A stretch of DNA of 64,000 nt from Pocillopora damicornis (Eukaryota), in NCBI RefSeq assembly GCF_003704095.1, contig NW_020844538.1:372001-436000 (forward strand), given 5' to 3'. A program made the translations under genes and the position numbers. Below, one piece after another: positions 141-57,500 of this stretch. Positions within the stretch are counted from its first letter, which is position 1; the number at the start of each line of letters is the position of its first letter. Below the pieces are notes generated by a model. The model did not search any database and had not been told where the DNA came from. It worked only from the letters and a program-made list of their open reading frames with translations.

Positions 141-1655
141 CCATAGGGCAGCCATTAAATGGAGGCAAATACTCAGTAAACGGAGTGGTGGATGTTCTAC
201 CAAATGGTGACGTGGAACTTCGCCTGAATGCAAGAAAAGAAAGCAGTGGACCTGGTGCCCAACCACTTAGCCCCACACCTATGTTACCTACAAGTGGCTA
301 CACTACTGGATCTTCCACTGGGGGAGCTCCCAATACTGGTACAGCACCAATCTCCGGATCGACCTCCGGATTCAGTACAACGCCAGGGTTCAGCACATCG
401 CCCAGAATAAGGAATGCAGGTACGACGGCACTGCAATGGCACAAAAAAATTCCTGATAAAATGACGATAACAATAATTATTATTGATAACAATAATATGA
501 TAAAACTGAAAATAGGTTCCTGCCGGAAAAATTATATTCTAATCTTCGCGTCCTCGTATTCTTACAATAACAACCGAATCGAACATGACAAGTTCTACAC
601 TGCACCTAAATGATGACTTGTATAATTAAATGTTCCATATCGCAGTGGAACATTTCACGGATGGTCGTCGTCTCCATTTTGATAAATGGCGTATGATATT
701 CTTTAAGTTTTCTGAAAGTAGCACATCTCGATCAACAGCGATCCTCCACATAGTTAGGAAGAGGAACGGCCCTAAAATACGGTCTTACTTTACGAAATTC
801 AAGTTTTCATCTGCAGGCGACAACCCAAGACAAGTTGGACTTAATTTGCACAACGACTACCGCAGAGTACACAATGCTCCAATAATGAGCCTTAATTCCC
901 AACTTAACGATGACGCTCAGAGATATGCAGAAAAACTTGCCCGTGAGAGTGTTTTTGAACATGACAAAAACAATAGAAACCAAGGAGAAAACCTGGGGTT
1001 ACAATGCGCCAGTGGAAGTGATGCAGATCTGGTTAAGAAGGTTGTTGATGCATGGTAAGCTTCATCTGAGGCAATGCAAGTTTAATAAAAAATATAATTT
1101 GAACTTGGCTTTTATTGATTTGGAATAAAGCTCAGAACAATTCCCAGATGAGCCAGTTTTTCACTGAGCGGCATCCCTTGAAGTTATTACTGACCAAGAA
1201 AAACATGCATTGAATCGTCTGCCCATCAGTAATGGGGTGTTTTTTCACAAATATGCGTGCCATTGCAGTGCTACAAGAATAACTTCTGATCCGCTGTCTC
1301 ATTTTTTAGGTATAAAGAGGTTTGTGGTTACAATTTCGACAATCCTGGAGTAAGTTCTGGGGTTACTGGTCATTTTACTCAAGTTGTGTGGAAAACAAGC
1401 ACCAGACTTGGCATTGGGTTCGCCAGGGGAAGTTACACATTTGGCTCACAAAGATTTGACAACTGCCTGTTTGTGGTCGGCCGATATCTAGAACCAGGAA
1501 ACTTAGTTGGTGCCTATTCACAGAATGTGTCGAAGGGAAGCTTTAACGTGCAGATTTGTCGTTCTTCAAATAATTACGGGAAGAGAAGTAAGCCTTTTCG
1601 AAAACCAAATTCGGGAAAAAGTAAAAGAAAGAGCACCTTAGAGTTGGTCCTTTAA
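141..1655 (+). CDS. CAP-superfamily (SCP/TAPS, GAPR-1-like) gene 1, 5'-partial; exons 141-419, 817-1054, 1310-1655
   Basis: GT-AG introns in phases 1 and 2 (Trp codon split TG|G). CAP motifs [43 protein letters not shown]. Exon 141-419 encodes the hairpin motif plus a Thr/Ser/Gly/Pro stalk. The signal exon is presumably upstream of the window. Confidence 0.9.
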
Positions 1656-30435: not shown

Positions 30436-31861
30436 ATGTGGCTTTGTTATCTCTTGCTTGCCATTGTAGCAGTCGATGGAGGTAAAGAAGATTCCTTTTT
30501 GATTAATGAAGTTTAAATTTGGCTATTTTCTTTTATGTAACTAATCGATTTTTAACTATACCGCATGTCAATTACAACGCGGTCGAAAGGGGCGTCTCAG
30601 AGGACAATAATATGTTGACGATAATATGTCAGTCCGCTGCAAGGGGGGTAGTTTTATTTATCGGAAACAAAATAAAGCAGGAAATCTATAGGAGAGGTTA
30701 CTAAAACAAAATCTAAATAAGGCTACAGTTTTAGAAAACCAATAGATCCGGAAATATTTTGAGGCCGTTGCTCGAGATAAAAATATATTTTCCAGTCTTA
30801 TCAATAAGCCTTCCTGATTTTCTTGTCGCAGATGTATTCCAGAATTCTCAAAATTTTAAGCTTTCTGGTACTGGAACGGCGGAGAAAAATGGCAAAATCA
30901 ATTTAAACCTTCAAATTCAGATCGCAGGAACTGGGGAGAGTCCGATAGGAGGTCTAACGGGGGCGAGTCCGACAACAAGTCCAACGGGGGCGAGTCCGAC
31001 AACAAGTCCAACGGGAGCCTCGGGAGTTCCGGGAGCAGCTCCAATTACTGGGGCACCAACAGCAGGAACAGGGGGAAGTATGCTACATCAATGCTTAGTT
31101 CTGACCTTCAAGTCTTCTTTCATTTCATTTCTTAATAATAGAACTACTTGGAGCAGGGGGAAGTATGTTACATCAATGCTTAGTTTCGACGTTGAAATCG
31201 TCTTTCATTTCATTGCCGTATAGCAGAAATGCCAGGCGTAGGGGGAGGCATGCTACATCAATGCTTAGTTTCGACCTTAAAATCTTCTTTCATTTCATTT
31301 CTGTATAGCAGAAATATCGGGAGTAGGGAAGGTATGCTACATCAGTGCTAAGTTCTGACATTAAAACCCTCTTTCATTTCTCTTCTGTAGAATAGAACTC
31401 CCGGGAGCAGGGGGAAGTATGCTACATGAATGCTCACTTGGACCTTAAAACCTTCTTTCATTTTCTTTCTGTAGTAAATGAAAACTGAACATACTTCATT
31501 TACTTAACATGATCTAACAAGGCGAAATTTTGTATGAGATAACATCTCACAACATAGCACGACAAACATACTATACGATATTTTATCCTAGATGTGACTT
31601 GTCAAATCAGTTTCAGGCTACATCGCAATCTCAGCCTCAGACTGCACAACTGGGAGAGCTGAGTCCTTCTCTTGAATAGCAGAATTAGAAATTGTTTCTA
31701 TCAGTTGTCCTCATGTTAACATTTGTTGCTCAGGGGCAAGTTTACGCGAGCTTGAGAATAAAACCATACGACCTAGTTTAAAATGTTCTACTTATAAAAA
31801 GGGCGACAAATGCTTTTGCATGGCCCTGCACTGGGTATAGCATCGATTCTTTCTTAACAAA

Positions 31862-31908
<47 letters not shown>

Positions 31909-34228
31909 AGCTGAAACGTCTGCCCAATGCCAACCCCCGCTGCTAGTTTTGTTCAGTTATATTTATAAATCTTAACTCTCCTTTTGAAGAAGACCCTTCA
32001 AGGTGTCCTTTGATAATGATTCCAAAGGTATAAGCCTTTAAAAACAAATGACTATTTGCCCTCACTTAGCCTATTTTCTTTCAGTGTTTACTGAGGAAGA
32101 ACAAATGGGTTTAGCAAAGCACAATGAATTCCGACAAGTACATGAAGCTCCTGCTATGACACTGGACAGAGATATGTGTGATCAGGCGAAACAGTACGCT
32201 CAGAAGCTTGTAGATATGGGTGCTCTACAGCATTCGTCGAGAGGAGAGAGAGAAGGGCAGGGAGAGAATCTTTCCATGGGATGTTCATCAAATGCTCCAC
32301 AAACCGTAGAGGAAGCCGTGACAAATTGGTGAGGTTAAATTTCGCTTTCTTGTAGCGCAGAAATTCGATTGGGTGTAGTATTCAACTTTGGCCTTTGAGA
32401 ATAGGCTCACGAGGCTACCCAACACAATGATGTCATTTCTTTTACAGTTGTATACTTAGTTGCTAAGCTTTTGATTTGCAGTGAGGCTGAAAGTGACCTT
32501 GTTGTGATAGAGAGCAGTATCTAGTCAGATTGATAACAAAGTAATTTACTTTCGAAAAGCAGCAAGGTTTGTATCATAACCAGGTTACCCTTAGCCTCAC
32601 TCCTCTTCGAAGGCTCGGCAACCAAACACGCAACTGTGAAAGGGACTATTTACTCCCAAACCTCGCTTTCACTACATTCTTCCCGAGTCTTTGCTAAGTT
32701 CTTATCGTTCGCTTGTGGGTGTTCCTTTGATTTTTGGCCCTACTCCCCATAAATAGAGAAAGTAACGATGATGGTAATCAGTTATTTTTTATTTCAGTGT
32801 TTTGGGAATATTTTTATTTTTGAATTACATTTCACCAGTTCGCGCCTTGAGAGTGAGGCGTAGAGGGTGGAATTGGATATTGCACCGTAAAAATGCATTA
32901 GGCCTACTTCCACTAATCTAGTTAAAATTCTTTTCTTAGAAATAAGGTGTAGTAACCCTGACTATTTCTGAATGATCTGATTCGAAATACTAAGGAGCAA
33001 CCACCCTTCCAGACAAGACATCTGAAACAGATATCGAATATATTTGGCACTCTGCAATAGCGGCCCGCACACAACCCAAGCGGTCCATACCACTGACGTT
33101 CAATCCAGTCTTTTTATGTAGCCCTCATTGGTGCCACTTCATGTTGCGGTTAATAACCTAATACCTTGTTATATGCTTACGGGAATCGATCGTGACATCT
33201 TCATTGGTTAGAAAAGCATCGCCGAAACCAAAACCTTTCTGGTACACTTCCTTTTCTTGAGTAACCAGGACAGAATTTCCCATAACAGATTTAAGCAGAA
33301 AACTCATGAGAGTAAATTAGTAGGGGATTATTAAGTGATCCAACACCAAATTCCCACAACAAACAGGAGAATAGTCGAGCCAAAAGTCGACCCAAAACAT
33401 CAATGGTGATGCCAAACTCGCCAGATGAGCTGCCTTAGCACGAATTTAGTGCCCGAATAAAGCACGGAATCTATTGAAATCTTCAGTCGGTACAGGTTCC
33501 ATGAAAAAACCGGTCACGAAAATGATACGAGTTAACAAACGGCGTAAAGAGGGTGGTGAAATATATGTGAAACCCATGTCTACAAAACTATTATAGATAT
33601 TAGAAAACTTGACGCAGAGGTGGAATTACTTGAATTAAAACTGTGAGGGCAATTTTACGAAACCGGAACACCTAAGGTTGCTAATGATGAACGATACTCT
33701 CCGCCGTGTGTTTTGTGATGTATGAAGCCAAAGCAGTCAATTAATGTTATGACAGCTGATTTTTCTTTTGCTCTATTTTTGTGTTCTCTCTCTTTAGTCT
33801 CATTGTTTTCCAGGTACAACGAGGTCTGTGATCCGGGATATAATTTTGGCGGCGCTTCCTTCTCTGGTGGAACAGGCCATTTTACACAGGTAGTTTGGAA
33901 AGGCAGTACAGTTCTTGGAATCGGACGGGCAGAGGGTACAATGCGAGGAATGAAATGTGCATATATTGTGGGCAGATATAAACCAGCTGGAAACATGATG
34001 GGGGACTTTGCCCAAAATGTGGTGAAAGGTTCCTTTGATAAAGGCAGCTACTGTGCATCAATTCCAAGAAAAAATCGATGGTTCTTTGACAAGAATGGGA
34101 AAGCAGTGAAGGTGAATGGAACCAAAGTTCCGACTTTGAAAACGGGAACACCTGAGAGTCGTGCCCAGCCGGTTGAGTTATTGAATAGCAAGAAGAAAAC
34201 AACTGTTTCGCACAAGCACAATAAATGA
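30436..34228 (+). CDS. Secreted CAP gene 7 with Gly/Thr/Pro stalk; exons 30436-30481, 30832-31077, 32085-32328, 33814-34228 (possible micro-exons at 31142-31416)
   Basis: Signal MWLCYLLLAIVAVDG; hairpin FKLSGTGTAEKNGKINLNLQIQI. Motifs [44 protein letters not shown]. Tail ...LLNSKKKTTVSHKHNK. Confidence 0.92.
31057..31475 (+). repeat. 85-bp tandem repeat (about 5 units) spanning the exon 2/intron 2 junction of gene 7
   Basis: Donor-like ggggga(a/g)|gtatgctacatcaatgcttag recurs at 31077, 31162, 31247, 31331 and 31416. Confidence 0.85.
31864..31903. repeat. (CT)n microsatellite
   Basis: Direct reading of the tc dinucleotide run. Confidence 0.95.
32438..32650. mobile_element. MITE-like insertion in gene 7 intron 3, absent from paralogous introns
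   Basis: Imperfect inverted ends tttacagttgtatacttagttgctaagc ... ggctcggcaaccaaacacgcaactgtgaaa. The corresponding intron copies near 45830-45850 and 45100-45120(-) lack it. Confidence 0.65.
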
Positions 34229-41082: not shown

Positions 41083-41128
41083 ATGTGGTTTTGTTATATC
41101 TTGCTTGCCATTGCAGCAGTCGATGGAG
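41083..41128 (+). CDS. Signal-peptide exon of a gene-7 paralog (rest lost in gaps or on misoriented contigs)
   Basis: MWFCYILLAIAAVDG followed by gtaaag; near-identical to 30436-30481 including upstream sequence. Confidence 0.8.
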
Positions 41129-43488
41129 GTAAAGGAGATTCCTTTTCGATTGATGAANNNNNNNNNNNNNNNNNNNNNNNNNNNNNNNNNNNNNNNNNNN
41201 NNNNNNNNNNNNNNNNNNNNNNNNNNNNNNNNNNNNNNNNNNNNNNNNNNNNNNNNNACAGAACCAAAGGTATCCGCGCTCTCACCGAATGACAACGGTA
41301 ACTGGTTAACTGATTTCAGAGTATATCCGTAAAACATTCTTGAAGTTTTTTTTTTTCTGTTTTAATGTTCTTTCTATTTTTGAAAAGTCAAATTTAAAAA
41401 CTTTTTTCTGAAGATATTATTACACATCTCCCATTCAATTCTTTTGGTAACACTGACCAGTTAAAAATGTTTTGTATATTTCACATCATTTTTAACCACT
41501 TATGATTTTACGCACAGGTAAAAAGAAATGAGGTGAATGTGTTCAATGTTAAAACAACGTTAACGTTCTTCAAATCTCTTACCAAAAGTTTGTCGAGTTT
41601 TGGTGACAGATTGTGTCAGAAGTGACGGACGATGTTTGCTTTGCCGAGAAGTAAAGTGAAATAATGTCCTTGGGTCAATAACTGTATTCCTTAGTTTACC
41701 GTGAAGAAAGGTTATTGGCTTATTCTGGACAATAATACCTGTTTTTTGCATTTTTGTAAGTTAACGTGGCAAAGTGATCTTTGCACTTTGACGTAATCTG
41801 GAACGTTAAACCCATATTGTGAGAAACTCTCTCTCGTTTTGTATTGTATTTGGTAATTGGACTGTGCGAAATCGTCAGCATAGTAAATATTGAGATCACA
41901 CATGAATCAAAGAAAGATTTCATCTAATTTTTCAAAAGCCTAGGAAACCTAGCCAATTTAATAGCCTTTCTGCATTCCAAGTGGGTCAATACGCCGGTAA
42001 ACTAATTTAAGGAACGCGGGTTATTACTTTTATAAGATAACTTAAAATGTTTCGGTTTTCTACGAGTTTATCGGTGCAATAAATGAAAAGTTTGTGACGA
42101 ATTCATGTCGCTCGTAATATGGCCGTTTTTTTCATAAATTCATAAATCACATTCACATAACCTGTAATCTTATTGAAGTGCGGAAATGGTGTGTTATTTT
42201 AAGAGAATTGAAAAAACGATTGTTAGGCGATGTGAATCATTTGACTTTGTTGGACTTTTCTCGTGTGAACTGATTAGTAGACCCATAGAATCTCCTCACG
42301 TGAAATCCACCAGCATTTTCCTCTCTTGAAGAATTGTTCCAGCTGGTACTTCTCAGTCCCCTAATTCTTTATTACGTGTCTTACTTCGCCAAATCTGACT
42401 TGGATTGAAAACTATCTAGTTTTCGAGTGAAAGGAATGAAAGGGAGTCGCACAGTATTGAAGCTCCCACCAGTGAGTAGTCGAGCAGAAAAGATGTCGTG
42501 GGTAGAAGATAAACGAAGTTATAAGTGTAATCGTGAAAGGGCAACGTGAGATCATTCATGTCTCGTTTAAAAGAAGAGTCTACGACACCTCATCAATTGA
42601 TAAGTATTTATCTGAAAAAATGGGGTAAGTTTCTTAAGAAACTGTGGTTCTGCGTCAGTGGGAGAGTATAAGAGGGCAGTTTAGTATTATCAACTGAGTC
42701 GATAGCTTAAATTGGGCACCGTTAAGAGTTTCAAAGCTGACATTTTGAGCGCCAGCTAGCCTTTCGTCAGAGCGAATTGAAAATTGTGTGTATGGAGCTA
42801 CGCTATTGGTGGGAATATGGTGAGGAGACAACAAGTATAAATTAGTTGAATGAATTTTTGATCTAGAGTTTTGCGGCTTTCCGAATTGCCTTGATTCAGG
42901 GAAAGGCCGCCAACTGCCAAATGCTGTTTAGAATGATTAGGAAGATTAAAGTGTCTAGCGACTGGTTTGGATGCGTCCTTGTCATTTCTCTATAAGACGC
43001 GAAAGTGTTCTCGGTTCTTAATAACGATAGATTTAACTACGTAGTTGCGAGGGTGAAATGTGAGAGTGATTGGAATGCGATCGATATTTTCCTCGTCGAT
43101 CGATTTTTTGGGCACGGTGGTGGCCCGCTTGAACGACAGAAAAACTGGTGCATAACCTCTGATTTTTATGAAAAATCAGAGTCGTCACTACATAAACGGC
43201 TTAAGTTCGTGACCGAAGTCTTAAAAATCAACCTTGAAAATGCTGACTAGCCTAGCTTTACTTCACACCGAAAATGGAGCAGTTTTTTAAACTCAGCCAT
43301 AGTTTGTGAAAAGGAGACAGGTCAAGTAGCTCCAGGGGTCCAGTTTGAAAATTTAAAAATCCTCTCTTCTTTGAAAGCGCTCTTTCTTNNNNNNNNNNNN
43401 NNNNNNNNNNNNNNNNNNNNNNNNNNNNNNNNNNNNNNNNNNNNNNNNNNNNNNNNNNNNNNNNNNNNNNNNNNNNNNNNNNNNNNNN

Positions 43489-45387
43489 ATGTTTCCAGCT
43501 GGTCTGTATCTGGCCACAGTATATGTACATTTCATTCCTCGCATTGTACCCTCTGCCCGTCCGATTCCGAGAACTGTACTGCCTTTCCAAACTACCTGTG
43601 TAAAGTGGCCTGTTCCACCAGAGAAGGAGGGGCTGGCAAAATCGTATCCCGGATCACAGACCTCGTTGTACCTGGAAAACATCGAGACTACATAAAGAGA
43701 ACACAAAAATAAAGGAAAAGAAAAATCAGCGGTCACAGCAATGTCTTAGGCATAAATTTGACTGCTTTGGCGTCACTCATCACGAAACACACGGCGGAGA
43801 GTATCGTCCATGATTAGCGACCTTATGTGTTCCGATTTTGTCGAGACTGTCCTCACAGTTTTAATTCAAGCAGTTCTACCCCTGTGTCATGTTTTCAAAT
43901 ACCTAAAATAGTTTTGCAGACATGGGTTTCACGTATGTTTCACCACCCTGATTTGCCACTTTGCTCGCTATATTCACTAAAATTTATTATCTCTTTCATC
44001 TATTCCTTTTTACGCCGTTTGTTAACTCGTATCACATTTTCGTGAGCGCTTTTTTCATGGGACCTGTAACGATTGAAAATTTGAATAGATTCCAAGCACT
44101 ATTCGGGTACTAAATTTGTGCTAAGGCAGCTCATCTGGTGAGTTTGGTATCACCATTGGTGTTTTGGCTCGGCTTTTGGCTCGATTATTCTCTATAAAAT
44201 TCCTAAGATATTTGTTGTGGGAATTTGATGTTGGATCACTTAATAATCCCCTACAGTGATATTTTTCTTCACTCACATGAGTTTTCTGCTTTATATTTAT
44301 TTATATTGATACTGTTGGGGGAAATTCTGTCCTGGTCTCTCGTGAAAAGAAAGCGTGACAGAAGAGTGTGACTATGTAAAAATATTATGAATTCTTTTGT
44401 ATCCTTAAGTCTGCTTCCGTAAAAATTGATAATAGGAGTTGGCGAAAGACTATAACAAGAATAGAAGCAGAGTAATTGGATAAAAGTAAGAAAAAATAGT
44501 AAGAAGGAAAGGGAACACAAAAAAGGTTTTGGTTTCGGGGATGCTTGTCTTAACCGATGAAGATGTCACAATGGATTCCTGTTAGCATATTACAAGGTGT
44601 CAGGTGATTAACTGTAACATGAAGTGACACCAATGAGGGTTACAGCAAGAAACTGGATTGAACGTTAGCATGGGTTATGTGCGGGCCGCTATTGCAGAGC
44701 GCCAAATATATTCGATATTTGTTTCAGATGTTTTGTCTGGAAGGGTGGTTACTCCTTAGTGTTTCGAATCATATCATTCAGAAATAGTCAGGGTTACTAC
44801 ACCCTACGTCTAAGAAAAGAATTGTAACCAGATTGGTGAAAGTAGGCCTGGTTTATTTTTACGTTGCAATAGTCAATTTCGTCCTCTACGCCTTACCCTC
44901 AAGTAGCGAACTGGTAAAATGTAATTCAAAATTAAAAGCATACCCAAAACACTGAAACAGAAAAAAACTAATTACCATAATTGTTACTTACTCTTTTTAT
45001 GGGGAATAGGGCCAAAAATAAAAGGAACACCCACGGGTAAACGATAGGAACTTAGCAAAGATTCAGGGAGAATTTAGTGAAAGCGAGGTTTGGGGGTAAA
45101 TTTCCTGGAAATGACATCATTGTGTAGGATAGCCTCGGGAGCTTATTCTCAAAGGCCAAGGTTGAATACTACACTTAATCGAATTTCTGCGCAGCAAGAA
45201 AGCGAGATTTAACCTCACCAATTTGTCACGGCGTCCTCTATGGTTGGTGAACCGTTTGATAAACATTCCATGGCAAGATTCTCTCCCTGTCCAACTCTGT
45301 CACTGCTCGGAGAATGTACTAGGCTACCCATATCTGCAAGCGTCTGAGCGTACTGTTTCGCCTCATCACACATTTGTCTGTCCAGTG
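43489..45387 (-). CDS. Gene-7 paralog fragment: partial CAP-a exon 45387-45219 and partial CAP-b exon 43671-43489
   Basis: LDRQMCDEAKQYAQTLADMGSLVHSPSSDRVGQGENLAMECLSNGSPTIEDAVTNW|[29 protein letters not shown]...[13 protein letters not shown]; both ends abut 100-N gaps. Confidence 0.85.
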
Positions 45388-45486
45388 NNNNNNNNNNNNN
45401 NNNNNNNNNNNNNNNNNNNNNNNNNNNNNNNNNNNNNNNNNNNNNNNNNNNNNNNNNNNNNNNNNNNNNNNNNNNNNNNNNNNNNN

Positions 45487-45727
45487 NTACCGACGAAGAA
45501 CAACAGGGTTTAGCAAAGCACAATGAATTCCGACAAGTACATGAAGCTGCTGCTATGACACTGGACAGACAAATGTGTGATGAGGCGAAACAGTACGCTC
45601 AGACGCTTGCAGTTATGGGTAGCCTGGTACATTCGCCGGGCAGAGACAGAGGTGGACAGGGAGAGAATCTTGCCGTGGGATGTTCAACAGACGCTCCACA
45701 AACCATAGAGCAAGCCGTGACAAATTG
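45487..45727 (+). CDS. Second gene-7 paralog fragment: CAP-a exon
   Basis: TDEEQQGLAKHNEFRQVHEAAAMTLDRQMC...LVHSPGRDRGGQGENLAVGCSTDAPQTIEQAVTNW followed by gtgagg; its sequence differs from both 32085-32328 and 45219-45387. Confidence 0.85.
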
Positions 45728-47390
45728 GTGAGGTTATATTTCGCTTTCTTCCTGCGCGGAAAATTCGATTATGTGTAATATTCAACTTTGGCCTTTGAGA
45801 ATAAGCTCCCGAGGCTATCCCACACAATGATGTCATTTGCTGACAATTTACCCCCAGACCTCGCTTTCACTAAATTCTCCCTGAATCTTTGCTAAGTTCC
45901 TATTGTTTACCCGTGGGTGTTCCTTTTATTTTTGGCCCTATTCCCCATAAACAGAGAAAGTAACGATGTTGGTTATTAATTATTTTTTTATTTCAGTGTT
46001 TGGGATTGTTTTTTCTTTTGAATTACATTTTACCTGTTCGCCTTAAGGGTGAGACGTAGAGGGTGGAATTTTATATTTCAACGTAAAAATACACCAGGCC
46101 TACTTCCACTAATCTTGTTACAATTATTTTCTTAGAAATAGGGTGAATGTCAGAATGAATGATCTGATTCGAAATACTTAAGAGCAACCACCCTTCCAAA
46201 CAAGACATCTGAAACAAATATCGGATATTTTTGGCGCTCTGCAATAGCGGCGCGCACACAACCCAAGCGGTCCATACCACTAACGTTCAATCCAGTTTCT
46301 TTCTGTAACCCTCATTAATGTCACTTCATGGTACGGTTAATAACCTGATACCTTGTTATATACTTATGGGAATCCATTATGACTTCTTCATTGGTTAAGA
46401 CAAGCATCGCCGGAACCAAAACTTTTTGCGTTCCTTTTCCTTTTTGCTCTTTGTTTCTTACTGTTATCCAATTACTCTGCTTCTATTCTTGTTATAGTCT
46501 TCCACCAACTCCCATACACAATTTTTGCTGAGGCAGACTGAAGGGTACAAAAGAATTCATAATATTTGAGCCTTGTCACACCTTTCTGGCACGCTTTCTT
46601 CTCATGAGAGACCAGGACAGAATTTCCCCTAACAGCATTAATACAATATCAAGCAGAAAAAGGCGTAAAAAGGAACAGATGAAAGAGAGAATATATATGG
46701 GTTTCACGAATATAAAATATTCGTGAAACCCATGTCTGCAAAACCATTATAGGTATTTGAATACTCGACGTAGGGGTACAATTGCTTGAACTAAAACTGC
46801 GGGGACAGTTTCGACAAAATCGGAACACCAAGAGTTGCTAATCATGGNNNNNNNNNNNNNNNNNNNNNNNNNNNNNNNNNNNNNNNNNNNNNNNNNNNNN
46901 NNNNNNNNNNNNNNNNNNNNNNNNNNNNNNNNNNNNNNNNNNNNNNNGCGATTAGAGGAATTATCACTGTTAAGTCATTGTTAAGGTTAAGGCCAAATCA
47001 AGTTGTCGGCGACGAAACCTGATGACAACGCGGAAACGTTCAGATTTATTTTCAAAGTGTTAAGAGGTCCTTTGCATTGTAATTGATTAAATATTTTAAA
47101 AAAGGGTTTTTGATTTTTCAATCAATGGCGAGGGGAGAGGCAAATTTACTTTGTAAGACTGACCATGAGACGTATTAAATACGACCTCTCCGCCAAAGAT
47201 CTCTTGCCCATAATGGATTATTTCTCGATATCCACATCGGTGCAATTGGCCTAGTCTAAACATCTGAAGACTCTCCTCGCCATGTTGAAATTAAAAAAAA
47301 ATAGGAGATTGCTCACTTGGGTACTTTTCGAAGTCTTTCCTTTTTTCTTATCTTAAATTTGCCTTTTGCATTTAGGACTTCCTTAAAAAA

Positions 47391-50300
47391 ATGTTGCTTT
47401 GGTGCCTTCTATTTTCCATCGTTGCTGCCCAAGGAGGTAAAAACGATTTCCTTTATTGAACTGTCTGAATTTAACGGCACAGTTCTTCTTCTTATTGACT
47501 CGTGAATTTTGCTTCATGCTGCGGGTAAACGACGAGGAGAATGAAATGGCTTTCGGTGGTATAACAGTTACTATAGCCTTATTAAACTAATGATTGTCAT
47601 TCTCATAAATGAAAATAAAAGAAAAACACTTAAAAAAAAATGGACAGCGAAAACAAATTTATTATACTCATAGCTTCTCTCCGCAGGAAAATATTTTATT
47701 TGGATCAAATTTCTCATCGTGCTCTTGCTCGTTGTGCATCTGTTCTCTTGTAAAGCATGTTGTTTCAACCGACCTGAGCGCGCGCCAAGTGGAAATCTTA
47801 ATGTAATCATATATGTTGTTTAATTGATTATTAAACTGCCTTCATGTATTAATTTTACATGTCATTTAAGTTTGCCCAAGAGACTGGATCGCCTTGCTTC
47901 CAGAACTTGACCCAGTTTTTGGTAGCATACAGTGACAAAGAGCATCGTAACTCCATAAAATGAGACCATCCCGTAAATTAATCAGGTTTTATTGTCGCAC
48001 GACTGATTTTAGTTCATGCTACTGTGTAGACAGAGGCACTATTAGAATCAGAGGGACTTCCTATCTAAGATCACCCCACAAATTCCATCGCCGAGGCTTA
48101 AACTCATATCTTTTTTTAAAAAACTACTTATCATCTATCGGTACCGTCCTTTTCCTTGGTTGTCACAGACATGGACCGCGATGCTTCCATTACAATCTAT
48201 GGCACTGGGATAATAAAACAGAACGGCACAGCCAATATGAATTTACAGATTAAGATAGGTGGACGTAAGGCAGGAGGTGTACCAGGAATTCCAATGGGAG
48301 GTGCAGCTCCATTGATAGGGAAAGAACAGCCCTTACAAGGAGGAGGTATGGTTTGTAAATTCAGTCTTCGCTATTTGGTTTAGTTTTGATGTAATTTTAA
48401 AGTTCGACGGTCATTTTGTATCTAAAATAGCATCGCAAAACCTGGATACAATCAGTTTTCCCTCCCATTAGTCCATGCAGTTTGTTTCATTAACCCTTTC
48501 ACTCCCAAGATCTAATTAGTTATTCTCCTTACTGTCTGCCATACAATTCTTACGATGTTAGTTTTGAGAATTTGGTATTGGATCAACTAATAATTCCATA
48601 ATTAGTATTTTTCTTCATTCTCATCACCTGCCTGCTTGATATTGTATCAATATTGTAAGGAGAAATTCTGTCTTGGTCACTTATGGGAGTGAAAGGGTTA
48701 AATCATCTTTCTAATTTTGAGATCAATGAAGTAAACCCGGTTATCACCTTATATACCATGGCTTGACCTCATATGGGTAATAATCACATTGTCCAAAGCT
48801 TCAGTTTCCTTTTTGTGGGGGGGAGGGGAGACAGAAATTAAGGTATAAGCGAAAACCAACGTAAGAATAAAAAAAAGGTGAAAGAAACATCCTCACATAG
48901 CCAGCCCCGTTAACAAGAAAAACTAAATGAATCTTGTATTCTGTTTGGCTACCCAAAGTGACTGGTGAAGTAATCTTGCTCACTCGGGAATTCCTGCTTT
49001 GATCCAACGCATTCCTATTAACCTAATAGCCCATAAAATTAAATAGGTTCCACAGTTTAGAAATCGTCATGTGCAGCTCCTTCGCAAATTTCACTACTAA
49101 ATGGTACAGGGTAACGTGTTATACAAACTACAAATGATTACAGTTCTCTTCTCCTGTCCTTGAAAAGACATAAGCCAGCATCAGAAAAAGCTTCATGAAC
49201 CTTTACTTATCATCATCATTAGTAGTCCTGTTGACGAGCCAAGTACAGTTAGTGATTTAATTTACTTGGAGAATTAATAGTCTGATCCCACTGTCTTGTT
49301 AAGAAAGTAGTAAAGAGAGTAAGTAATAATTCTGAATAGTCCAGCCTCAGGCCTGAATTCCAGAACCCCTCCCTTTCCCCCGCCCTCTTATTTACCTCCT
49401 ATGCAAGGACAGTACCACTTAAATACTTATTCTTGATNNNNNNNNNNNNNNNNNNNNNNNNNNNNNNNNNNNNNNNNNNNNNNNNNNNNNNNNNNNNNNN
49501 NNNNNNNNNNNNNNNNNNNNNNNNNNNNNNNNNNNNNNNNNNNNNNNNNNNNNNNNNNNNNNNNNNNNNNNNNNNNNNNNNNNNNNNNNNNNNNNNNNNN
49601 NNNNNNNNNNNNNNNNNNNNNNNNNNNNNNNNNNNNNNNNNNNNNNNNNNNNNNNNNNNNNNNNNNNNNNNNNNNNNNNNNNNNNNNNNNNNNNNNNNNN
49701 NNNNNNNNNNNNNNNNNNNNNNNNNNNNNNNNNNNNNNNNNNNNNNNNNNNNNNNNNNNNNNNNNNNNNNNNNNNNNNNNNNNNNNNNNNNNNNNNNNNN
49801 NNNNNNNNNNNNNNNNNNNNNNNNNNNNNNNNNNNNNNNNNNCTTATTATAACAACCTTGACTATATTTTTAAAAACTTTATCCTGAAATACTCCGCATC
49901 AGCATCTAAAAAAAGTGATATGCGACGGTACTAAACGAAGAGAGTTATTTAGAACAGATAACTTATTTTAGAACCAGTTTGGATTGAGGAATATGGAGTT
50001 AGGGGCTTCAAGTGTTAAGATTCTATCCCTTATTACGGGCATTTATTCCAAATAGGGCAATGCAGAGGATTTAGTCAAATGAACTCGTTTCGAACAGCTT
50101 CTCCATTGTGCCTTTTCTTTCAGTCCTTCGTCCTTTAAATCCGCACGCTGTCTTTTTCCTCATTAGCTTCTTTTGAGCTCTCCTATGAAATAATACAATC
50201 TCCACATGCGTTACCACCATGCAGGAACAATGTGTTTGATGGATTGTGACAATTTAACGTCGCCTCACTTGAAAAGAACATAGTTTTTGAGAACTCTGAG

Positions 50301-51056: not shown

Positions 51057-51810
51057 AATAGCAAGAACGAAGGTATTACCAAAAATAAATAATCAAATTA
51101 CCATGAATAAAAGAACTTCAATCAAATCCCGTTGTTTCCTTTAATTCTGAGCTGTGTCATATTGATGATTTAATGCCATTGAAATCGTAGCACAAGGCCA
51201 AAGATCCTTCCTATAAATCTAGAAACAAACGGAAATTCCAGAAATATGGCAATTTGTGGTCCAAAGAAGGAATCTTGAAATGTTGATTTCAATAAGAAAC
51301 AAACGATTGAGTTAGTTTTTTGCTGTTTGGCATTCAACTGTTTGACCTCTTTTTCCAATTATGGATAAGTACCTTAAAGTTTTGGTCTTTGTCTTTGTCT
51401 TCTTTTTTTTTGTTTTTAAATTTCTTTAAAAATTGGGCGAAAAGATTCCTACTCTTACATTTCATTATTTTCAAGTTTATTCATTCACTTATTCATTTCA
51501 CTTATTCACCCATTTCCATTATTTTTTTCTGTGATGATGGGAGGGGTGGGGGGCACCAGAGCCCTGATTCAGTCTACCCTTTTATCAAAATTTCGAATCA
51601 GCTGAGAATAAAATCTAAACAGTGAAGTATGTCGTTATTATTTTTGCTATTACGCGGATTAAAACACACGCGAAAGAAAACACGCGCAAATAAAAGCATT
51701 AACATAACAAAAGTTGTAATACAAGACAAGACATGGCCTTGTTCGCCCTATATATATATTTATTTTATCGTACACTACATAACAATTTTTGAGCCTAGCA
51801 AAATAACCAA

Positions 51811-54560
51811 TTAACCATGCTTGTGATGGGAAATGTGACCTTTCTTTTTGCTGTTTAGCAGCCCAAGGTCCTCGCCTCGCTGCTTTTTAAATCCAGTCTT
51901 TTTAGTCTTCCAGGCGTCCTTGACCGGAGGAGCTGAAATGGAAAGAAGAAAGTCAACAAAAGTAATTAGCTGCATTTAAGACCTACACTTTCCAGAGTTT
52001 ACGGAAACTTTGATTTTTCGCCTTAGAATTCGAAAGATTAAATAGATTCCGATTCTATGTCATCAAACCAAACCATGTTTTCTATTATCAGTAATTTTAT
52101 ACCATTAGTAACGGTAATTCCGTCATTGTATTAATTAAAGATAAGTGAATGCAAAAAGTCAGAATATAGAGCAAAACAGCTCACCAGTTTCTCCTGCTAG
52201 GTCTCCTGCCGGGAATGCCCCTCCTTGTTGGCCACCTGCAGTAAGACCAGTAGCAGGTATTCCTGCTCCAAATCCTCCTTCCGAACCTCCTACTCCTCCT
52301 TCTGGGGCTCCTAACCCTCCCACTGGGGCTCCTAAACCTCCCTCTGGGGCTCCTAACCCTCCTTCTGGGGCTCCTAATCCTCCCACTGGNNNNNNNNNNG
52401 GGGCTCCTAACCCTCCTTCTGGGGCTCCTAATCCTCCCACTGGGGCCCCTAACCCTCCTTCTGGGGCTCCCAACCCTCCCTCTGGGGCTCCTAACCCTCC
52501 TTCTGGGGCTCCTAACCCTCCTTCTGGTGCTCCTAACCCTCCTACTGGGGCTCCCAGCCCTCCCTCTGGGGCTCCTAACCCTCCCACTGGGGCTCCTAAC
52601 CCTCCCACAGGCGCTCCTAAACCTCCTCCTGCGCCTCCCAGTCCTCCTGTTGTGCTAACTGCGCCTCCCAGCCCTCCTGTTGTGCTAACTGCGCCTCCTG
52701 GGGCTCCTAATCCGCCTACTGTGCCACCTAGCCCTCCTGCTACCCTTGCTTGACCTCCTGATTTGCCTCCTATTCCTCCTACTGGACTGACTGCGCCTCC
52801 TCCAAGACCACCTGTCACGCTTCCTACGCGTGTGCTGCTTCCTTTTTTTCCGGATATGCCAGCTATCTTACCTGCTGTTCCAATTACCTTACTTGCTACC
52901 TTTCCTGCCTTTCCTCCCTTTAATGCTATGCTTCCAACTTTTGCTGCCAGGCCCAATAATCCAAGAGGTTGTGGTTGGCCACCCATTTCTTTTGATGGAC
53001 CATTAACACCTCCTCCTTCGGGTTCTACCCCTCCTCCCAGCCCCTCATCAGGTCCTTCAGCTGCCATTCCCTGCCCACCAATTTGTCCTACCGGTCCTTC
53101 TATGTCAACTTGTAGATTTAATCTGGTTGCGCCGTTTTTTTTTATTGTTCCAGTGCCAGAGATAGTTAATTGAGAATCTTGGCCCACCTCTGAAACAATC
53201 AATAAATAGTACCCCTTTGATGAATAGAAGGTGAAGGTGATCGCGGATTTTTGAACCACGACTTTGCCTTGGTTAGTAAAAAGCAAGTTGGTCAGTAATT
53301 ATCAGCCTTCTTGAACGAACAAGTTTATAATTTTGAGGTTTTCTACATGGCTAAAACCACCGACGAGATTTCACAAAAGGGTGGCAAGGTGAATTTAGGG
53401 AACTCGTCGTGTAATTTTCTTCTGCTGAATTAAAAAGGAAGATAATCACGCTCGGATGGCTGATCAAAACTTTAGGATTCGCTTCATATTGCTCGTTAAC
53501 GGAGGTGGCCTTTCAATGACAAATAACTGAAAAGAGAAACAAAGAAAAGGGGAAGACATTGTAAAAACCTCCTTAAATTTATGGGTATATCAAATGTTTC
53601 AGTTCGATTCCTTTGTTTTTCTAAGCTTCACTATCGAAACTCGCAATCATTTTGGAGGGTCATGAGCGCAGTTATCATATTTCATAAAGCTTCAGAAAGG
53701 CCAAGTGGCAGTCGAAATTTTATGACTTAAAAGGTACAACTGAAATAACACTGAAAATTTGTTAATGAACATAAGAGAAGAAACGATCTACGACATACCT
53801 CCCCCTTCAACAGGGACTACTGCCCTTCCCCTGAGAGTTCCTGCCCCCAGTGGTGGAACTTCTCTCATAGAAGTCATACGCCCTTTAGAAAGAACGCGAA
53901 ATAAGCTCTTGAGTTACAAGCCGTCAAGAGAATAATTCAATAACAGTTTTGAGTAGTTCTGGTGCAATAAGATAAAAATAATAGCAGTATCAGTGTGGGT
54001 GTAAAGCAAGTGCTAGAAACAAAAGTATTAGCTGTGACAAAAGCAGTGGCAGTTTCTGGAGCAGATGCGTAATGAAAGTAATGCGTAATGAAAGTCGAAC
54101 CTTTTTGTTTCAAGAAAAGGTTTCCATTTTATTCAAATTTACTTTAATTTCATATCACATCACCCTCGAGGCTTCACGAGTATTTTAAAATTTTTCCTTG
54201 GTATATATGAATGTAACTCGTAGACGTATGGTCAGTAATTATTCTGCGATAAAGGAGTAGATTCCCAACACCTTGAATTTCTGAGCAGGGTTTTGAGCGA
54301 TATTTTGATAGATCGATATAGATATTATTCCAAAAAGCCTATTTTAAACTGAACCTATTTGTATGAAGAGTCAATGGTCAATTTTTTTTTGCTCTTATTA
54401 CCTCTGAAACGTCCTCTGTTTCTTCGATGTCGGGCTGCAATGTAGAATAAAATTATTACTTGGGAAGACGAAAAGAAATGTAACGTTAAACTGGACGAGT
54501 TGCTTCTGTTTTACCTCCTTCTACTGCTACAACAGCCAACAGAAGAAAACGAAGCCACAT
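51811..54560 (-). CDS. Secreted Gly-rich repeat protein derived from the CAP cluster but lacking the CAP domain (gene 10); exons 54560-54515, 54434-54402, 53882-53799, 53189-52185, 51932-51811
   Basis: All-phase-1 GT-AG introns keep one open frame: MWLRFLLLAVVAVEG / ARHRRNRGRFR / GRMTSMREVPPLGAGTLRGRAVVPVEGG / EVGQDSQLTISGTGTIKKNGATRLNLQVDIEG...(GGLGAP[E/V])n...GET / APPVKDAWKTKKTGFKKQRGEDLGLLNSKKKGHISHHKHG*. The two small internal exons are less certain. Confidence 0.82.
52260..52700 (-). repeat. Coding 21-bp tandem repeat (GGLGAP[E/V]) plus two 30-bp units (GGLGGAVSTT-like)
   Basis: ggggctcctaaccctcc(ttc/cac)t period-21 array on the plus strand. A 10-N gap at 52390-52399 suggests the array is collapsed. 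Confidence 0.95.
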
Positions 54561-57500
54561 GGCTTTAAATCAGTCCTGATTGAAATAAAAAAGACGAGCG
54601 GTTAGCGAATAAGGAAATTTCTGAAAGAAATTTCTTGAAACGTGGGAAAACTTTCGATTCTTAGTCCAGCGGGTTGAAATTTGACCATAAATCGATGATC
54701 GTGCTTGATTCAGATGAGAGAAGGGATCAAATTCAAAAGTCTACACACGTTCACAAGTATTGGATTTCATTGATTTGAAAATCAGTGAAGGACCCTCTGC
54801 GCATGCCCGGACGAATAAGTGCGGCGCTTTATCATAATTAGCACTTTGTCTTAGTTATTTTTAGCTAAAGAAAAACACAACGCCCGAATGTCCCCGTTCA
54901 CAGATCATGTAAATGTGTAACTTATCTTATCCCTTCTTTTGCCTAAAAATAAAGGAAAGATTGGAGGCAAAGAAATTTATTAACCTCAGGATCAACAAAC
55001 GTTAAATTCTTTGTCAACGACCAGTAAGCAGGGCGGCTTCGAATTACAGTGAAATTGTTCTCTAGAGTTAAAACTGATCTCAGATTCACTTACTTATCTC
55101 AAAGGTTGATTGCTAACTTTTGAAATAGTGTATTTCGTCTATCTCACCAGTATGACGTTGGGTTTTTGTCACCAGACTAGAGAGAGATGGAATGCTGCCT
55201 CCTGTCCTTTTTATATAATGAGATAAGCCTATTAGTGGAGCCCTATTCCCCTGGTCACTAGACTAAAAGGTTATTGGCTCGTTCTCAAGGATAACCTGTT
55301 CTTCTCCGAAGTTCTGAAAGTCAATTTCTATTCGTTTGGCGATTCTTTAAGTGGCTAGGTGGTTTATTGAAAGTATGCTCTTCAGAAACCAGATAGGTTA
55401 ATTACCAAATGTTCACATATTTATATTTCTTAGAAAGCCTTCATATCGAGGAAAAATTTACGTATTTTTATTTTTTTTATTCTTTTATATTTTTTGCCAT
55501 TAAAGTTCGTTATTAAATGTTTCATCAAGAGGCTCTGGCTTGGCGAAAAAGCTTGAAAACAGACTAAATAGGATTCAGGGGAAACGTTTCCGAATATGTG
55601 AGGTCATGACCTTGTATTGTGACAGAGCAGGTAAAAACTTCTCCTTCATAGGCGGAAAATTTTTAACCTTGTATCTTGAGCTATTCCTAAAGCTTGATGA
55701 ACAGGAAATACGCAATTCCGAAATAAATACATCTGGATATCTTTAAGGACCATTCTTGTTGAGCTCTCTTTCAGAGAAAATTTATCTGACCATACCTAGA
55801 TTCACAAAAAGCAACAAATATTTGTCTTTTAAAAATTTAGGATGCATACAAACAAGCAAATATTGAGGAGAAGTAAATCGAAATATATTTATAGCATAGC
55901 ATGATGGGAACGAATTACTCAGCGAATAACATTCTGATGGCACGTTGAAGAGGCTCGCGTGGCATCATGGACGATTCGGATTATTTAAGCGTTTCGCGGG
56001 AAAGTTAAGTCATTTCAGGTCTGTCAGTCTTATGTTTGACCACTTTTTTTTTTGTACTTGTTATAATTTTGGTATTCCAGCTCCCTGTGAAATATGATTA
56101 AGATCATGCGATTTGTGATTAGTAGTGCAACCAGGTTAGTTTACCCTTTCCTCGAGGTATTGTGCTGCTGTATTAGATGACAAATACGTTTCCACACTTT
56201 TTTTGGCCCCATCTAAAGAGTGGTATTTTAGCAGTTTTTCGTATCTGGCGTACGCTAGTCTCAGGGTGCACATGTTAAGATTGTATCAGGATGCGTATAC
56301 AAGAAGACTGCCTGAATCATCCCAAAAAAAGTTTTTCACATTGAATGTCTCCGGTGAGTATAGTCAGAATCTGCCCTTTTCTTCTCGTGATATATGGAAA
56401 AATCCCATATATCTCGGGAGACAATTCTGAAATAATTCCTGTGAGTTAACACGATTTGAGCAAGGTTTTTTCGAAAATTATAACAAAAGTGGTGATCGGT
56501 GAGTATCGATGATGGTGATAACAATGATAGTAAAATTTAAGAGAAGAATAATTCTTGTTACCCAAGATTCATTCACGTCGGAAGTATAGGTACTCTGAAT
56601 TGATTTGAATTTTTCCCGTTTGCCACATTGACCTACCAAGATAACCAAATGTCTTTTCACAATAATAGGTTAGCCTCTTCAGAATTCTTTCTACAGAATT
56701 GAATCTATTATTGCAATAACATAAGTTTTTTTTTTTTTCACTTAATTTACTCCACTCATCGTGCTTTTATGAGTTTGAGATGGCGAGGTGCCGCCATCTT
56801 TGAAATACGAAAATGATCATTGAGATTAACCTACTCGCCGCGAGTCAAAATTTGCCGCGCATCGGATTGAAAATCTGGGGTCAACAATCTCAAGTCTTGC
56901 CACACAGCTGTGTATTACTCCCCTCGCTTCTCTGACTGTCTACGATTAATGTAAATTACAAGCATCATATGACCCGGCCCCGCTCGCGCAACCCTGTAGA
57001 AAACCGGGAAGATTTTACTCGTTCTCTTTTATATCCCACAAAGGAATAGTGCTTTTTCGGATGTTTTTTCGATGTTGAGCTGATATGATTTAGGTTAAAT
57101 TTAAGTTTTCTCTGAACTTTGTAAAAAGTCTTTACAACCTCCCTTAATTCAAGAATGTTTTATTTAAATTTAAATTATATTTACTAATTTATAGTCTGTC
57201 AGAGTAGTCCACTGAATATCCAGATTTCTCTAATTCCCAGTTAAGCAGTAAACGTTTAGTCGTCAGTTGCATAATTGAAACCGTTATCTTTTAAAATTTG
57301 ATATTACTGTCGTTTGTCTCAAGGTGCTAGAGATTAAATCCGTATTTTGTCTTTTTTTTATCCCTGCTTCTTAAAGAGACGGGGCATACCAATTAACCCG
57401 AGTTTCACCCATTTGGTCTCCCTGTGAGAGTTCTGCAGGTAGGTGAACCTTATTGATATACTTCAGGTTCCATGTTATCGTACACGAGGTTAGATTGAGG

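What the first reader, a model, noticed from the sequence alone, without database searches (positions are those of the whole stretch)
51811..54560. CAP-less derivative: a new Gly-rich elastomer-like secreted protein born from a CAP gene
Seen: this inverted gene shares with CAP gene 7 a 46-nt signal exon (MWLRFLLLAVVAVEG vs MWLCYLLLAIVAVDG), the hairpin motif, and the extreme C-terminus (LLNSKKKGHISHHKHG* vs LLNSKKKTTVSHKHNK*). Both CAP-encoding segments are absent and the stalk has expanded into (GGLGAP[E/V])n. Established: Gly/Pro-rich hydrophobic repeats are characteristic of elastomeric proteins such as elastin, lamprin (GGLGY) and flagelliform silk. Inference: a structural protein (mucus, skeletal matrix, mesoglea or cnida) evolved by domain loss inside the cluster, with possible assembly or cross-linking ends in the hairpin and the Lys/His-rich tail.
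Basis: partly seen in the sequence, partly recalled or inferred. Interest (0 to 1): 0.85.

Follow-up and report, generated by a model that had tools for sequence, protein, structure and literature searches.

The report
CAP-less glycine-rich secreted coral protein
A stony-coral gene inside a cluster of CAP-domain genes has lost its CAP domain and expanded its flexible glycine-rich stalk into a repeat; it is transcribed and spliced as predicted, but its function is still unknown.

Summary
On the minus strand, 54560-51811, lies a gene whose five predicted coding exons are all joined as predicted in RNA contigs from three independent studies. A sixth, non-coding 5' exon sits behind a TATA box. The product has about 429 residues, plus whatever lies in the gap. 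It comprises a signal peptide, an Arg-rich stretch, a predicted amphipathic beta-hairpin, a Lys/Gly/Ala-rich segment, at least 16 GGLGAP[E/V] units, and a Lys/His-rich tail.

The signal exon, hairpin and tail match CAP gene 7 (30436-34228) far beyond shuffles (0/5000 each). No CAP domain remains. An outgroup coral, Desmophyllum pertusum, has the same signal, hairpin, Gly-rich stalk, CAP and conserved LLNSKKK tail in tandem and in synteny. CAP loss is therefore the derived state.

The repeat units differ only by synonymous changes in codons 1-6, so the peptide is under selection. The 10-N gap keeps the frame as written and also if the 21-nt register is kept, but no contig spans it.

The elastomer or structural role is only compositionally plausible. 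The protein has no Cys and no Tyr, and no homologue with a known function. The mechanism of origin resembles antifreeze glycoprotein arising from trypsinogen. The scan has not noted this gene on other DNA.

The parts
55208..55217 (-). TATA-like box about 25-30 nt upstream of the inferred transcription start
   Evidence: Read directly. The position fits the 95-letter 5' extension of the X10 contig.
55094..55188 (-). Non-coding 5' exon (the 5' end is approximate), with donor GTAAGT at 55093
   Evidence: The loose ends of RNA contigs at 54575 (table 7) match 55094-55123 exactly. Sequence read.
54515..54575 (-). Exon with 15 nt of 5' UTR plus 46 nt coding for the signal peptide (ATG at 54560); ends in phase 1
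   Evidence: It is homologous to the signal exons of genes 7, 8 and 10, including the acceptor 15 nt before the ATG.
54402..54434 (-). 33-nt exon coding an Arg-rich stretch (contains RHRR); no counterpart in the CAP paralogues
   Evidence: Junctions 54434|54515 and 53881/2|54401/2 in X1, X6 and X10. No other copy in the window or genome.
53799..53882 (-). 84-nt exon, specific to this gene
   Evidence: Junction 53189|53799 in X6 and X10, and a matching loose end in X1. Unique in the genome.
52185..53189 (-). Large stalk exon (1005 nt as written): hairpin, acidic Gly-rich linker, Lys-rich segment, repeat array, non-repeat end; phase 1 at both ends
   Evidence: RNA contigs tile both sides of the gap and show no internal junction.
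53098..53172 (-). Amphipathic beta-hairpin motif shared with the CAP paralogues and with Desmophyllum CAP genes
   Evidence: AF2 predicts strands at residues 6-15 and 21-30 with pLDDT about 90. The beta moment beats shuffles. Homology shown.
52846..52971 (-). Lys/Gly/Ala-rich segment, moderately amphipathic as a helix, ending in G-K-K
   Evidence: Helical moment up to 0.51, reached by 53 of 2000 shuffles. AF2 gives a weak helix at residues 94-108.
52287..52638 (-). Tandem array of the 21-nt unit coding GGLGAP[E/V] (16 units as written), with 42- and 63-nt higher-order periods
   Evidence: The pattern is unique to this locus in the 234-Mb assembly.
52390..52399 (.). Assembly gap inside the repeat array, not spanned by any RNA contig
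   Evidence: The frame is kept as written and also if the register is kept. The true length is unknown.
51811..51932 (-). Last coding exon: Lys/His-rich tail homologous to the C-terminal extension of the CAP2 exon of gene 7; stop at 51813-51811
   Evidence: Junction 51932|52185 in X1, X6 and X10. Tail homology.
51523..51810 (-). 3' UTR
   Evidence: X6 contig 20 runs from 51523 to 51932. AATAAA motifs seen.
30436..34228 (+). CAP gene 7, the closest intact paralogue in the window (signal 30436-30481, stalk exon 30832-31077, CAP exons 32085-32329 and 33814-34228)

Best explanation
This is a real, expressed, lineage-restricted gene of a pocilloporid-type stony coral. The 234-Mb assembly and coral RNA libraries suggest Pocillopora damicornis, which is an inference.

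Shown:
- The gene has six exons, a TATA promoter and canonical splice sites.
- The product has a signal peptide and no Cys or Tyr. About 31% of its residues are Gly.
- It is predicted to be disordered apart from a 25-residue amphipathic beta-hairpin.
- It carries at least 16 GGLGAP[E/V] units whose peptide sequence is under purifying selection.

Shown by comparison:
- It descends from a 'stalked' CAP gene with the order signal, hairpin, Gly/Ala/Pro stalk, CAP, Lys-rich tail.
- An inverted duplicate lost both CAP-coding segments.
- It kept the phase-1 donor of the stalk exon.
- It acquired a new acceptor just before the old C-terminal tail.
- It gained two small exons coding a basic stretch.
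- It amplified a motif resembling the ancestral stalk (GGGTAAPGV-like) into the 21-nt array.

Inferred:
- The secreted product acts as a flexible, hydrated extracellular polymer.
- The acidic repeat block is flanked by basic ends.
- The hairpin may mediate self-association or docking, as in its CAP relatives.
- The Lys/His-rich parts may serve as sites for ionic, metal or lysyl-oxidase-type cross-links.

The confidence given is for gene reality plus CAP-loss origin. For a structural or elastomer-like role my odds are about 0.3.
For: - Splicing and expression: four coding junctions plus the 5' UTR junction occur in polyA/oligo-dT RNA contigs of three studies.
- Frame: the reading frame is intact across the exons.
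- Variants: across four runs there is no frameshift or stop variant in the CDS.
- Repeats: 12 variant codons in positions 1-6 of 15 complete units are all synonymous.
- Homology to the cluster: signal, hairpin and tail each score 0/5000 against shuffles. The best non-self hits genome-wide are the neighbouring cluster genes.
- CAP absence.
- Polarity: the Desmophyllum pertusum loci carry tandem signal + hairpin + Gly-rich stalk + CAP1 + CAP2 + LLNSKKK tail genes, followed by the orthologue of gene 11.
- Hairpin: predicted with pLDDT about 90, the rest disordered.
- Composition: no C or Y. The repeat is 43% G and 14% P, and high combined Gly+Pro is the recognised basis of elastomeric disorder (PMC5703643; PMC9999432).
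- Cross-linking enzymes: lysyl oxidase genes exist in the genome. This is permissive only.
Against: - No contig spans the gap, so an in-frame product is inferred, not proven.
- Variants between individuals or species in the non-repeat parts are 13 non-synonymous to 6 synonymous, close to neutral expectation. Much of the protein is therefore weakly constrained.
- No orthologue outside the genus was found, so the age of the gene is unknown. These tools may also hide near relatives.
- About half of the repeat units carry Glu. That makes the domain more polar than elastin and argues against simple hydrophobic coacervation.
- No tissue, cell-type or proteomic datum was available.
- The self-association test of the hairpin could not be run.
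Confidence: 0.8

Rival explanations
1. The product is a precursor that is cut into peptides rather than a structural polymer. The released pieces would be the cationic amphipathic Lys-rich segment, possibly amidated, and perhaps the basic tail. The acidic Gly-rich repeat would serve as a neutralising pro-region.
For: - The Lys-rich segment has a helical hydrophobic moment up to 0.51, reached by 53 of 2000 shuffles.
- It is preceded by X-Pro dipeptides and followed by G-K-K, a classical amidation and dibasic motif (sequence; the rule is from general knowledge).
- An RHRR furin-type site lies just after the signal peptide.
- The layout alternates acidic and basic blocks.
Against: - A pro-region would not need 16 or more units conserved at the peptide level with synonymous-only variation.
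- The AF2 helix has low confidence.
- There is only one candidate peptide per precursor.
- There is no homology to any known antimicrobial or neuropeptide precursor.
Confidence: 0.15
2. It is a structural component of cnidocysts, in the manner of cnidoin or spinalin, or of the skeletal organic matrix.
For: - It is Gly-rich, secreted and lineage-specific.
- It has a His/Lys-rich end.
- The acidic repeat could bind Ca2+.
- From general knowledge, CAP relatives occur in cnidarian venoms.
Against: - It has no Cys at all. Cys-rich-domain disulfide polymerisation, which from memory defines minicollagens, NOWA and cnidoin, is therefore impossible.
- It lacks the Asp-rich blocks typical of coral acid-rich skeletal proteins.
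- No expression or proteome data were examined.
Confidence: 0.15
3. It is a transcribed but functionless remnant of a rearranged CAP gene, that is, a decaying pseudogene with a slippage-prone microsatellite-like repeat.
For: - It sits inverted in a rearranging cluster that also holds broken CAP fragments.
- It has lost the family's domain.
- The pN/pS ratio is near neutral in the non-repeat parts.
Against: - A 1290-nt frame is intact over five exons with canonical junctions.
- Two exons were gained.
- Only synonymous differences separate the repeat units at six of seven codons.
- The gene is present and spliced in polyA RNA of three studies, with no disabling variant.
Confidence: 0.05

Closest known systems
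Stalked CAP-domain (PF00188) genes of the same cluster and of Desmophyllum pertusum (for example KAJ7374886.1, which is a partial model)
   Same: - A non-coding 5' exon with an acceptor 15 nt before the ATG.
- A 46-nt phase-1 signal exon (MWL...).
- A stalk exon that opens with the same amphipathic beta-hairpin and continues Gly/Ala/Pro-rich.
- A phase-1 donor.
- A C-terminal LLNSKKK...HKH tail.
- The same chromosomal neighbourhood.
   Different: - Both CAP-coding exons are gone.
- The tail is now a separate short exon behind a new acceptor.
- Two extra small exons code a basic stretch.
- The stalk is about four times longer and carries a regular 7-residue repeat.
- The orientation is inverted.
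Antarctic notothenioid antifreeze glycoprotein gene derived from a trypsinogen-like protease gene
   Same: This is the same mode of gene birth. The parent gene donates the secretory signal and the 3' end. The catalytic or globular coding part is lost. A short in-frame element is amplified into a long repetitive coding region. The new gene stays next to its parents (PMC6410882).
   Different: - Here the amplified element resembles an already coding, already Gly-rich stalk motif rather than a partly non-coding 9-nt element. That derivation is an inference from motif similarity.
- The retained 3' part is still coding.
- No adaptive function is known.
- No polyprotein cleavage sites lie between the units.
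Elastomeric repeat proteins (tropoelastin VGVXP blocks, abductin GGFGGMGGGX, lamprin GGLGY, flagelliform silk GPGGX)
   Same: - It is secreted.
- It has short tandem Gly-rich, Pro-containing hydrophobic units predicted to be disordered.
- Lys-rich non-repeat segments could carry cross-links (PMC9999432; PMC5703643).
   Different: - No sequence homology.
- Glu occurs in about half of the units.
- No Tyr, Cys or Met-rich chemistry.
- No KAAK-type cross-link motifs.
- The mechanical behaviour is untested.

Membership tests
CAP / CRISP / PR-1 superfamily (PF00188) | Presence of the CAP (SCP) domain | tested here: not met
   A six-frame PF00188 search of the genome hits five other window genes but nothing in 51811-54560. 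Tblastn with gene 7's CAP exons hits only the tail. Hmmscan of the exons finds nothing.
CAP / CRISP / PR-1 superfamily (PF00188) | Common descent with cluster members, judged by the non-CAP parts (signal exon, hairpin, tail, exon phases) | tested here: met
   It is a descendant of the family but no longer a member by domain.
Elastin-like / elastomeric repeat proteins | Tandem short motifs with high combined Gly+Pro content and predicted disorder | tested here: met
   The repeat unit GGLGAP[E/V] is 43% Gly and 14% Pro. AF2 gives low confidence and no secondary structure outside the hairpin for the first 150 residues. The criterion is taken qualitatively from PMC5703643.
Elastin-like / elastomeric repeat proteins | Defined cross-linking sites and enzymes | tested here: inconclusive
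   There are 22 Lys, 5 His, 11 Gln, and no Cys or Tyr. Lysyl oxidase genes are present in the genome. No elastin-type KAAK spacing is seen.
Elastin-like / elastomeric repeat proteins | Coacervation and reversible elastic recoil | not testable with these tools
   This needs recombinant protein.
Elastin-like / elastomeric repeat proteins | Sequence homology to tropoelastin, lamprin, abductin or silk | tested here: not met
   No hit at E <= 0.001 for the 262-aa exon piece that includes the repeats. Only a coral hairpin hit appears among 1.84 billion representatives.
Cnidocyst wall proteins (minicollagen / NOWA / cnidoin type) | Terminal Cys-rich domains for disulfide polymerisation (the definition is from memory) | tested here: not met
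   The product contains no cysteine.
Partial de novo genes of the AFGP-from-trypsinogen type (a mechanism, not a homology family) | Parent gene supplies the signal and 3' end, the internal domain is lost, a short unit is amplified, and the gene sits next to its parent | tested here: met
   Definition taken from PMC6410882.

The most novel reading that the evidence does not exclude
Pocilloporid corals have evolved their own elastin-like, self-assembling extracellular polymer from a CAP-gene stalk. It would be a block polyampholyte with an acidic GGLGAP[E/V] core, basic ends and a beta-hairpin assembly module. It would form a hydrated elastic or coacervate matrix in mucus, mesoglea or the tissue-skeleton interface. 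This would be a dated, mechanistically transparent birth of a biomaterial gene in Cnidaria.
Probability: 0.15. Interest if true: 0.75.

Novelty: new variant of a known kind. Interest (0 to 1): 0.5.

Why it matters
It is a clean, RNA-verified example of how a new secreted repeat protein can arise. The globular domain is discarded, the secretion signal, an assembly motif and the tail of the parent are kept, and a linker is amplified. Parent copies sit beside it and an outgroup fixes the direction of change.

Corals have few characterised non-collagen matrix or mucus proteins. A lineage-specific, well-expressed Gly-rich polymer is therefore a candidate for mucus, adhesion or tissue-mechanics studies in a major reef builder.

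The conserved amphipathic hairpin in front of the CAP stalks is itself undescribed. It may explain how this CAP family is anchored or oligomerised.

Tried and rejected
- The search for homologous proteins on the 262-aa exon piece and on its first 150 residues: both blank. In the first search low-complexity words saturated the candidate list. The tools may withhold the window's own genome and its near kin, so these blanks do not show novelty.
- ESM Atlas: no usable hit.
- JGI metagenome loci: none.
- Literature search for GGLGAP: only irrelevant collagen and Arabidopsis peptides.
- 'Glycine-rich' in Pocillopora papers: refers only to NF-kB.
- The Tara coral-genome paper does not mention CAP.
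No verdict.
I repeated it with coordinates only.
- BLASTN found no remnant of the CAP exons or of gene 7's introns or 3' UTR in the focal introns.
- The introns and the two small exons have no other copy in the genome, so a transposon origin is not supported.
- The plus-strand frame of the repeat, (PPSGAPN)n, is open, but splice polarity shows minus-strand transcription.
- The spliced protein was never sent to a search tool as one joined sequence.
- The gap was not filled or looked up.
Full report
**Setting.** The window is G000:C1173:372001-436000 of a 234.35-Mb, 4393-contig eukaryotic assembly. RNA libraries that hold the locus are labelled coral or marine metagenome. The Pocillopora damicornis assembly is reported as 234 Mb (PMC6208414). 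I therefore take the organism to be that coral or a very close relative, as an inference.

The window carries a plus-strand array of CAP-domain genes. PF00188 exon hits lie at window positions 840, 19973, 32111, 45510 and 59888. Tblastn with gene 7's exons finds about ten copies in all.

**The gene.** Reading the minus strand and locating the exons by script gives:
- e1 54560-54515 (46 nt)
- e2 54434-54402 (33 nt)
- e3 53882-53799 (84 nt)
- e4 53189-52185 (1005 nt, including 10 N)
- e5 51932-51811 (122 nt)

All have AG/GT borders. The total is 1290 nt, in frame, giving 429 codons plus the stop.

A simpler 3-exon model (e1-e4-e5) is also in frame and mirrors gene 7, so RNA evidence was needed. 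I laid the contigs of four RNA runs from four studies on 51400-55000. Junctions 51932|52185, 53189|53799, 53881/2|54401/2 and 54434|54515 appear in X6 and X10. X1 shows three of them, plus a loose end that matches the end of e3. All have CT..AC on the plus strand, which is GT..AG on the minus strand.

The contigs also stop matching at 54575 and continue with letters found exactly at 55094-55123. This reveals a non-coding 5' exon of about 95 nt with a GTAAGT donor. It lies 25-30 nt downstream of a TATATAAAAA box.

The repeat exon is joined only to the tail exon, which runs into a 3' UTR reaching about 51523. No CAP exon is joined to it in these runs. Run X2 (random-primed) also has intronic contigs, which could be pre-mRNA or DNA.

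**The gap.** Upstream of 52399 only one frame is open, and it reads GGLGAP up to the gap, leaving two bases. Downstream of 52390 the frame beginning PVGGLGAP is the only one that passes the confirmed e4-e5 junction and ends at the homologous tail.

As written, 2 + 10 N makes four codons, so the frame is kept. The upstream flank ends at position 17 of the 21-nt unit and the downstream flank starts at position 16. An in-register join therefore needs 19 mod 21 bases, or a 2-base overlap. That is again 1 mod 3, so the frame is kept if the register is kept.

No contig spans the gap. Continuity and unit number remain unproven. I neither filled the gap nor looked it up.

**Homology to the CAP genes.** Gene 7 comprises a signal exon (30436-30481), a stalk exon (30832-31077), CAP1 (32085-32329) and CAP2 plus tail (33814-34228). 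It shares with the focal gene:
- an acceptor 15 nt before the ATG
- a 46-nt signal-coding part ending in phase 1
- a stalk exon that opens with the same roughly 30-residue motif
- a phase-1 donor at the end of the stalk
- the last 30 or so residues

Smith-Waterman scores are 59 (signal), 80 (hairpin) and 68 (tail). Shuffle maxima are 39, 49 and 46, so 0 of 5000 shuffles reach the observed score in each case.

Genome-wide, the best non-self hit of the focal hairpin plus mid region is gene 10. The best non-self hit of the tail is gene 7. Taken alone these are weak at genome scale (E = 0.03 and 0.6), but both fall in the same cluster at the equivalent positions. DNA similarity extends into the 5' UTR part of e1.

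**Direction of change.** The only hit among 1.84 billion representative proteins is a hairpin-bearing fragment, 51% identical over 59 residues. Its cluster mate is a Desmophyllum pertusum hypothetical protein.

The two loci fetched for these proteins are a 2.7-kb metagenome contig and 33 kb of the D. pertusum genome. They show tandem genes with the signal MWLYYLFL, the hairpin, a GGGTAAPGVGPTA-type stalk, CAP1, CAP2 and a tail ELLNSKKKKTTVAHK(H/R)N. These are followed by the orthologue of window gene 11.

The ancestral gene therefore had a Gly-rich stalk, a CAP domain and the tail. The focal gene, which lies inverted between the gene 7-like copies and gene 11, is the derived form. The focal unit GGLGAPV resembles the ancestral stalk motif GGTAAPGV. 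From that similarity I infer that the array amplified existing coding sequence.

The tail exon corresponds to the C-terminal extension of the old CAP2 exon, now behind a new acceptor. The 252-nt intron before it keeps no detectable CAP remnant. Exons 2 and 3 and their introns have no other copy in the genome.

**Is it functional?** Fifteen complete units show 12 variant codons in positions 1-6, and all are synonymous. Only position 7 varies, between E, V and G. About one third of sites in these codons are synonymous, so this pattern is very unlikely without selection on the peptide, even allowing for shared ancestry of the units.

The GGLGAPxGGLG coding pattern occurs 13 times in the genome, always in this exon. 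Differences between the window and the RNA contigs in the CDS are 6 synonymous and 13 non-synonymous, against 353 and 922 sites. The ratio is about 0.8, so the non-repeat parts evolve fast. No frameshift or stop was seen.

**The protein.**
- Composition: 134 Gly, 45 Ala, 40 Leu, 31 Pro, 31 Val, 22 Glu, 22 Lys, 15 Arg, 5 His, no Cys and no Tyr.
- Pfam: no family in any exon.
- Fold: single-sequence AF2 of the first 150 residues of e4 gives a confident beta-hairpin (residues 6-15 and 21-30, pLDDT about 90). The rest is low confidence, with a weak helix at residues 94-108.
- Hairpin: both strands alternate hydrophobic and polar residues more than shuffles do. One face must therefore be buried, either by self-association or by a partner. 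I could not test self-association.
- Lys-rich segment: moderately amphipathic as a helix (moment 0.51, reached by 53 of 2000 shuffles) and ends in G-K-K.
- Charge layout: basic N-terminal stretch, acidic linker, basic Lys-rich segment, acidic repeat, basic Lys/His tail.

**Function.** The repeat domain has the composition that underlies disorder and elasticity in elastomeric proteins (PMC5703643; PMC9999432). Lysyl oxidase genes exist in the genome.

Against a close analogy with elastin, about half of the units carry Glu, no elastin-type cross-link motifs are present, and no homology exists. The lack of Cys excludes the disulfide-based assembly of cnidocyst wall proteins. The lack of Tyr excludes dityrosine chemistry.

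I rate an extracellular polymer or matrix role as the most likely single function, at about 0.3. The other options are a processed-peptide precursor (0.15), a cnidocyst or skeletal component (0.15) and a functionless relic (0.05). The remainder is unknown.

**Comparison and novelty.** The mode of origin parallels notothenioid antifreeze glycoprotein. There, a trypsinogen-like gene gave the signal and 3' end and a short unit was amplified (PMC6410882).

The gene is not a CAP family member, because that domain test failed, but it is a CAP descendant. It is a new variant of known kinds, namely domain-loss gene birth and Gly-rich secreted repeat proteins. It is not categorically new. It is probably present in public annotations as an uncharacterised protein. 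The tools appear to hide the window's own records, so I could not check this.

Noticed in passing
window 31065-31473 (+), inside gene 7: There are 4.8 tandem copies of an 85-nt unit made of a 21-nt phase-preserving micro-exon-like piece plus a short intron-like piece with GT/AG borders (one GC). The stalk of the intact CAP paralogue also seems to grow by duplication.
   Followed up: partly
window 41083-45728: Gene 8 looks rearranged. Its signal exon is at 41083. There are inverted CAP2 and CAP1 fragments at 43491-43670 (-) and 45218-45385 (-) next to a plus-strand CAP1 at 45489-45728. Several assembly gaps lie between them, so part of this may be misassembly.
   Followed up: no
L002 (Desmophyllum pertusum MU826827.1, 33 kb) and L001: This is a syntenic tandem array of stalked CAP genes with the same hairpin and a conserved LLNSKKKKTTVAHK tail, followed by the orthologue of window gene 11. 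The public 132-aa model KAJ7374886.1 covers only the signal and stalk and reads into the intron, so it is mis-annotated.
   Followed up: partly
window 52846-52971 (-): A cationic Lys/Gly/Ala-rich segment is preceded by Q-P-Q-P and followed by G-K-K, which makes it a possible processed, amidated amphipathic peptide. The helical moment is only moderately above shuffles.
   Followed up: partly
window 158-361, 13517-13729, 30834-30930, 48177-48264 (+): Several CAP genes of the cluster begin their stalk exon with a related motif (x-I/L-S/T-G-x-G-T...N-G...L-N-L-Q-I/V). The motif is predicted to form an amphipathic beta-hairpin and matches no Pfam family. It may be an undescribed module of this CAP subfamily.
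   Followed up: partly
G000:C2:619000-647100: A cluster of at least three lysyl-oxidase (PF01186) genes.
   Followed up: no
window 52190-52645 (+): The antisense frame of the repeat is open and would read (PPSGAPN)n. Splice polarity shows transcription from the minus strand only in the runs laid.
   Followed up: yes
window 51770-51790: The 3' UTR carries small insertions (CAC, G) and several substitutions in run X6 relative to the assembly. This is allelic or species-level variation.
   Followed up: no
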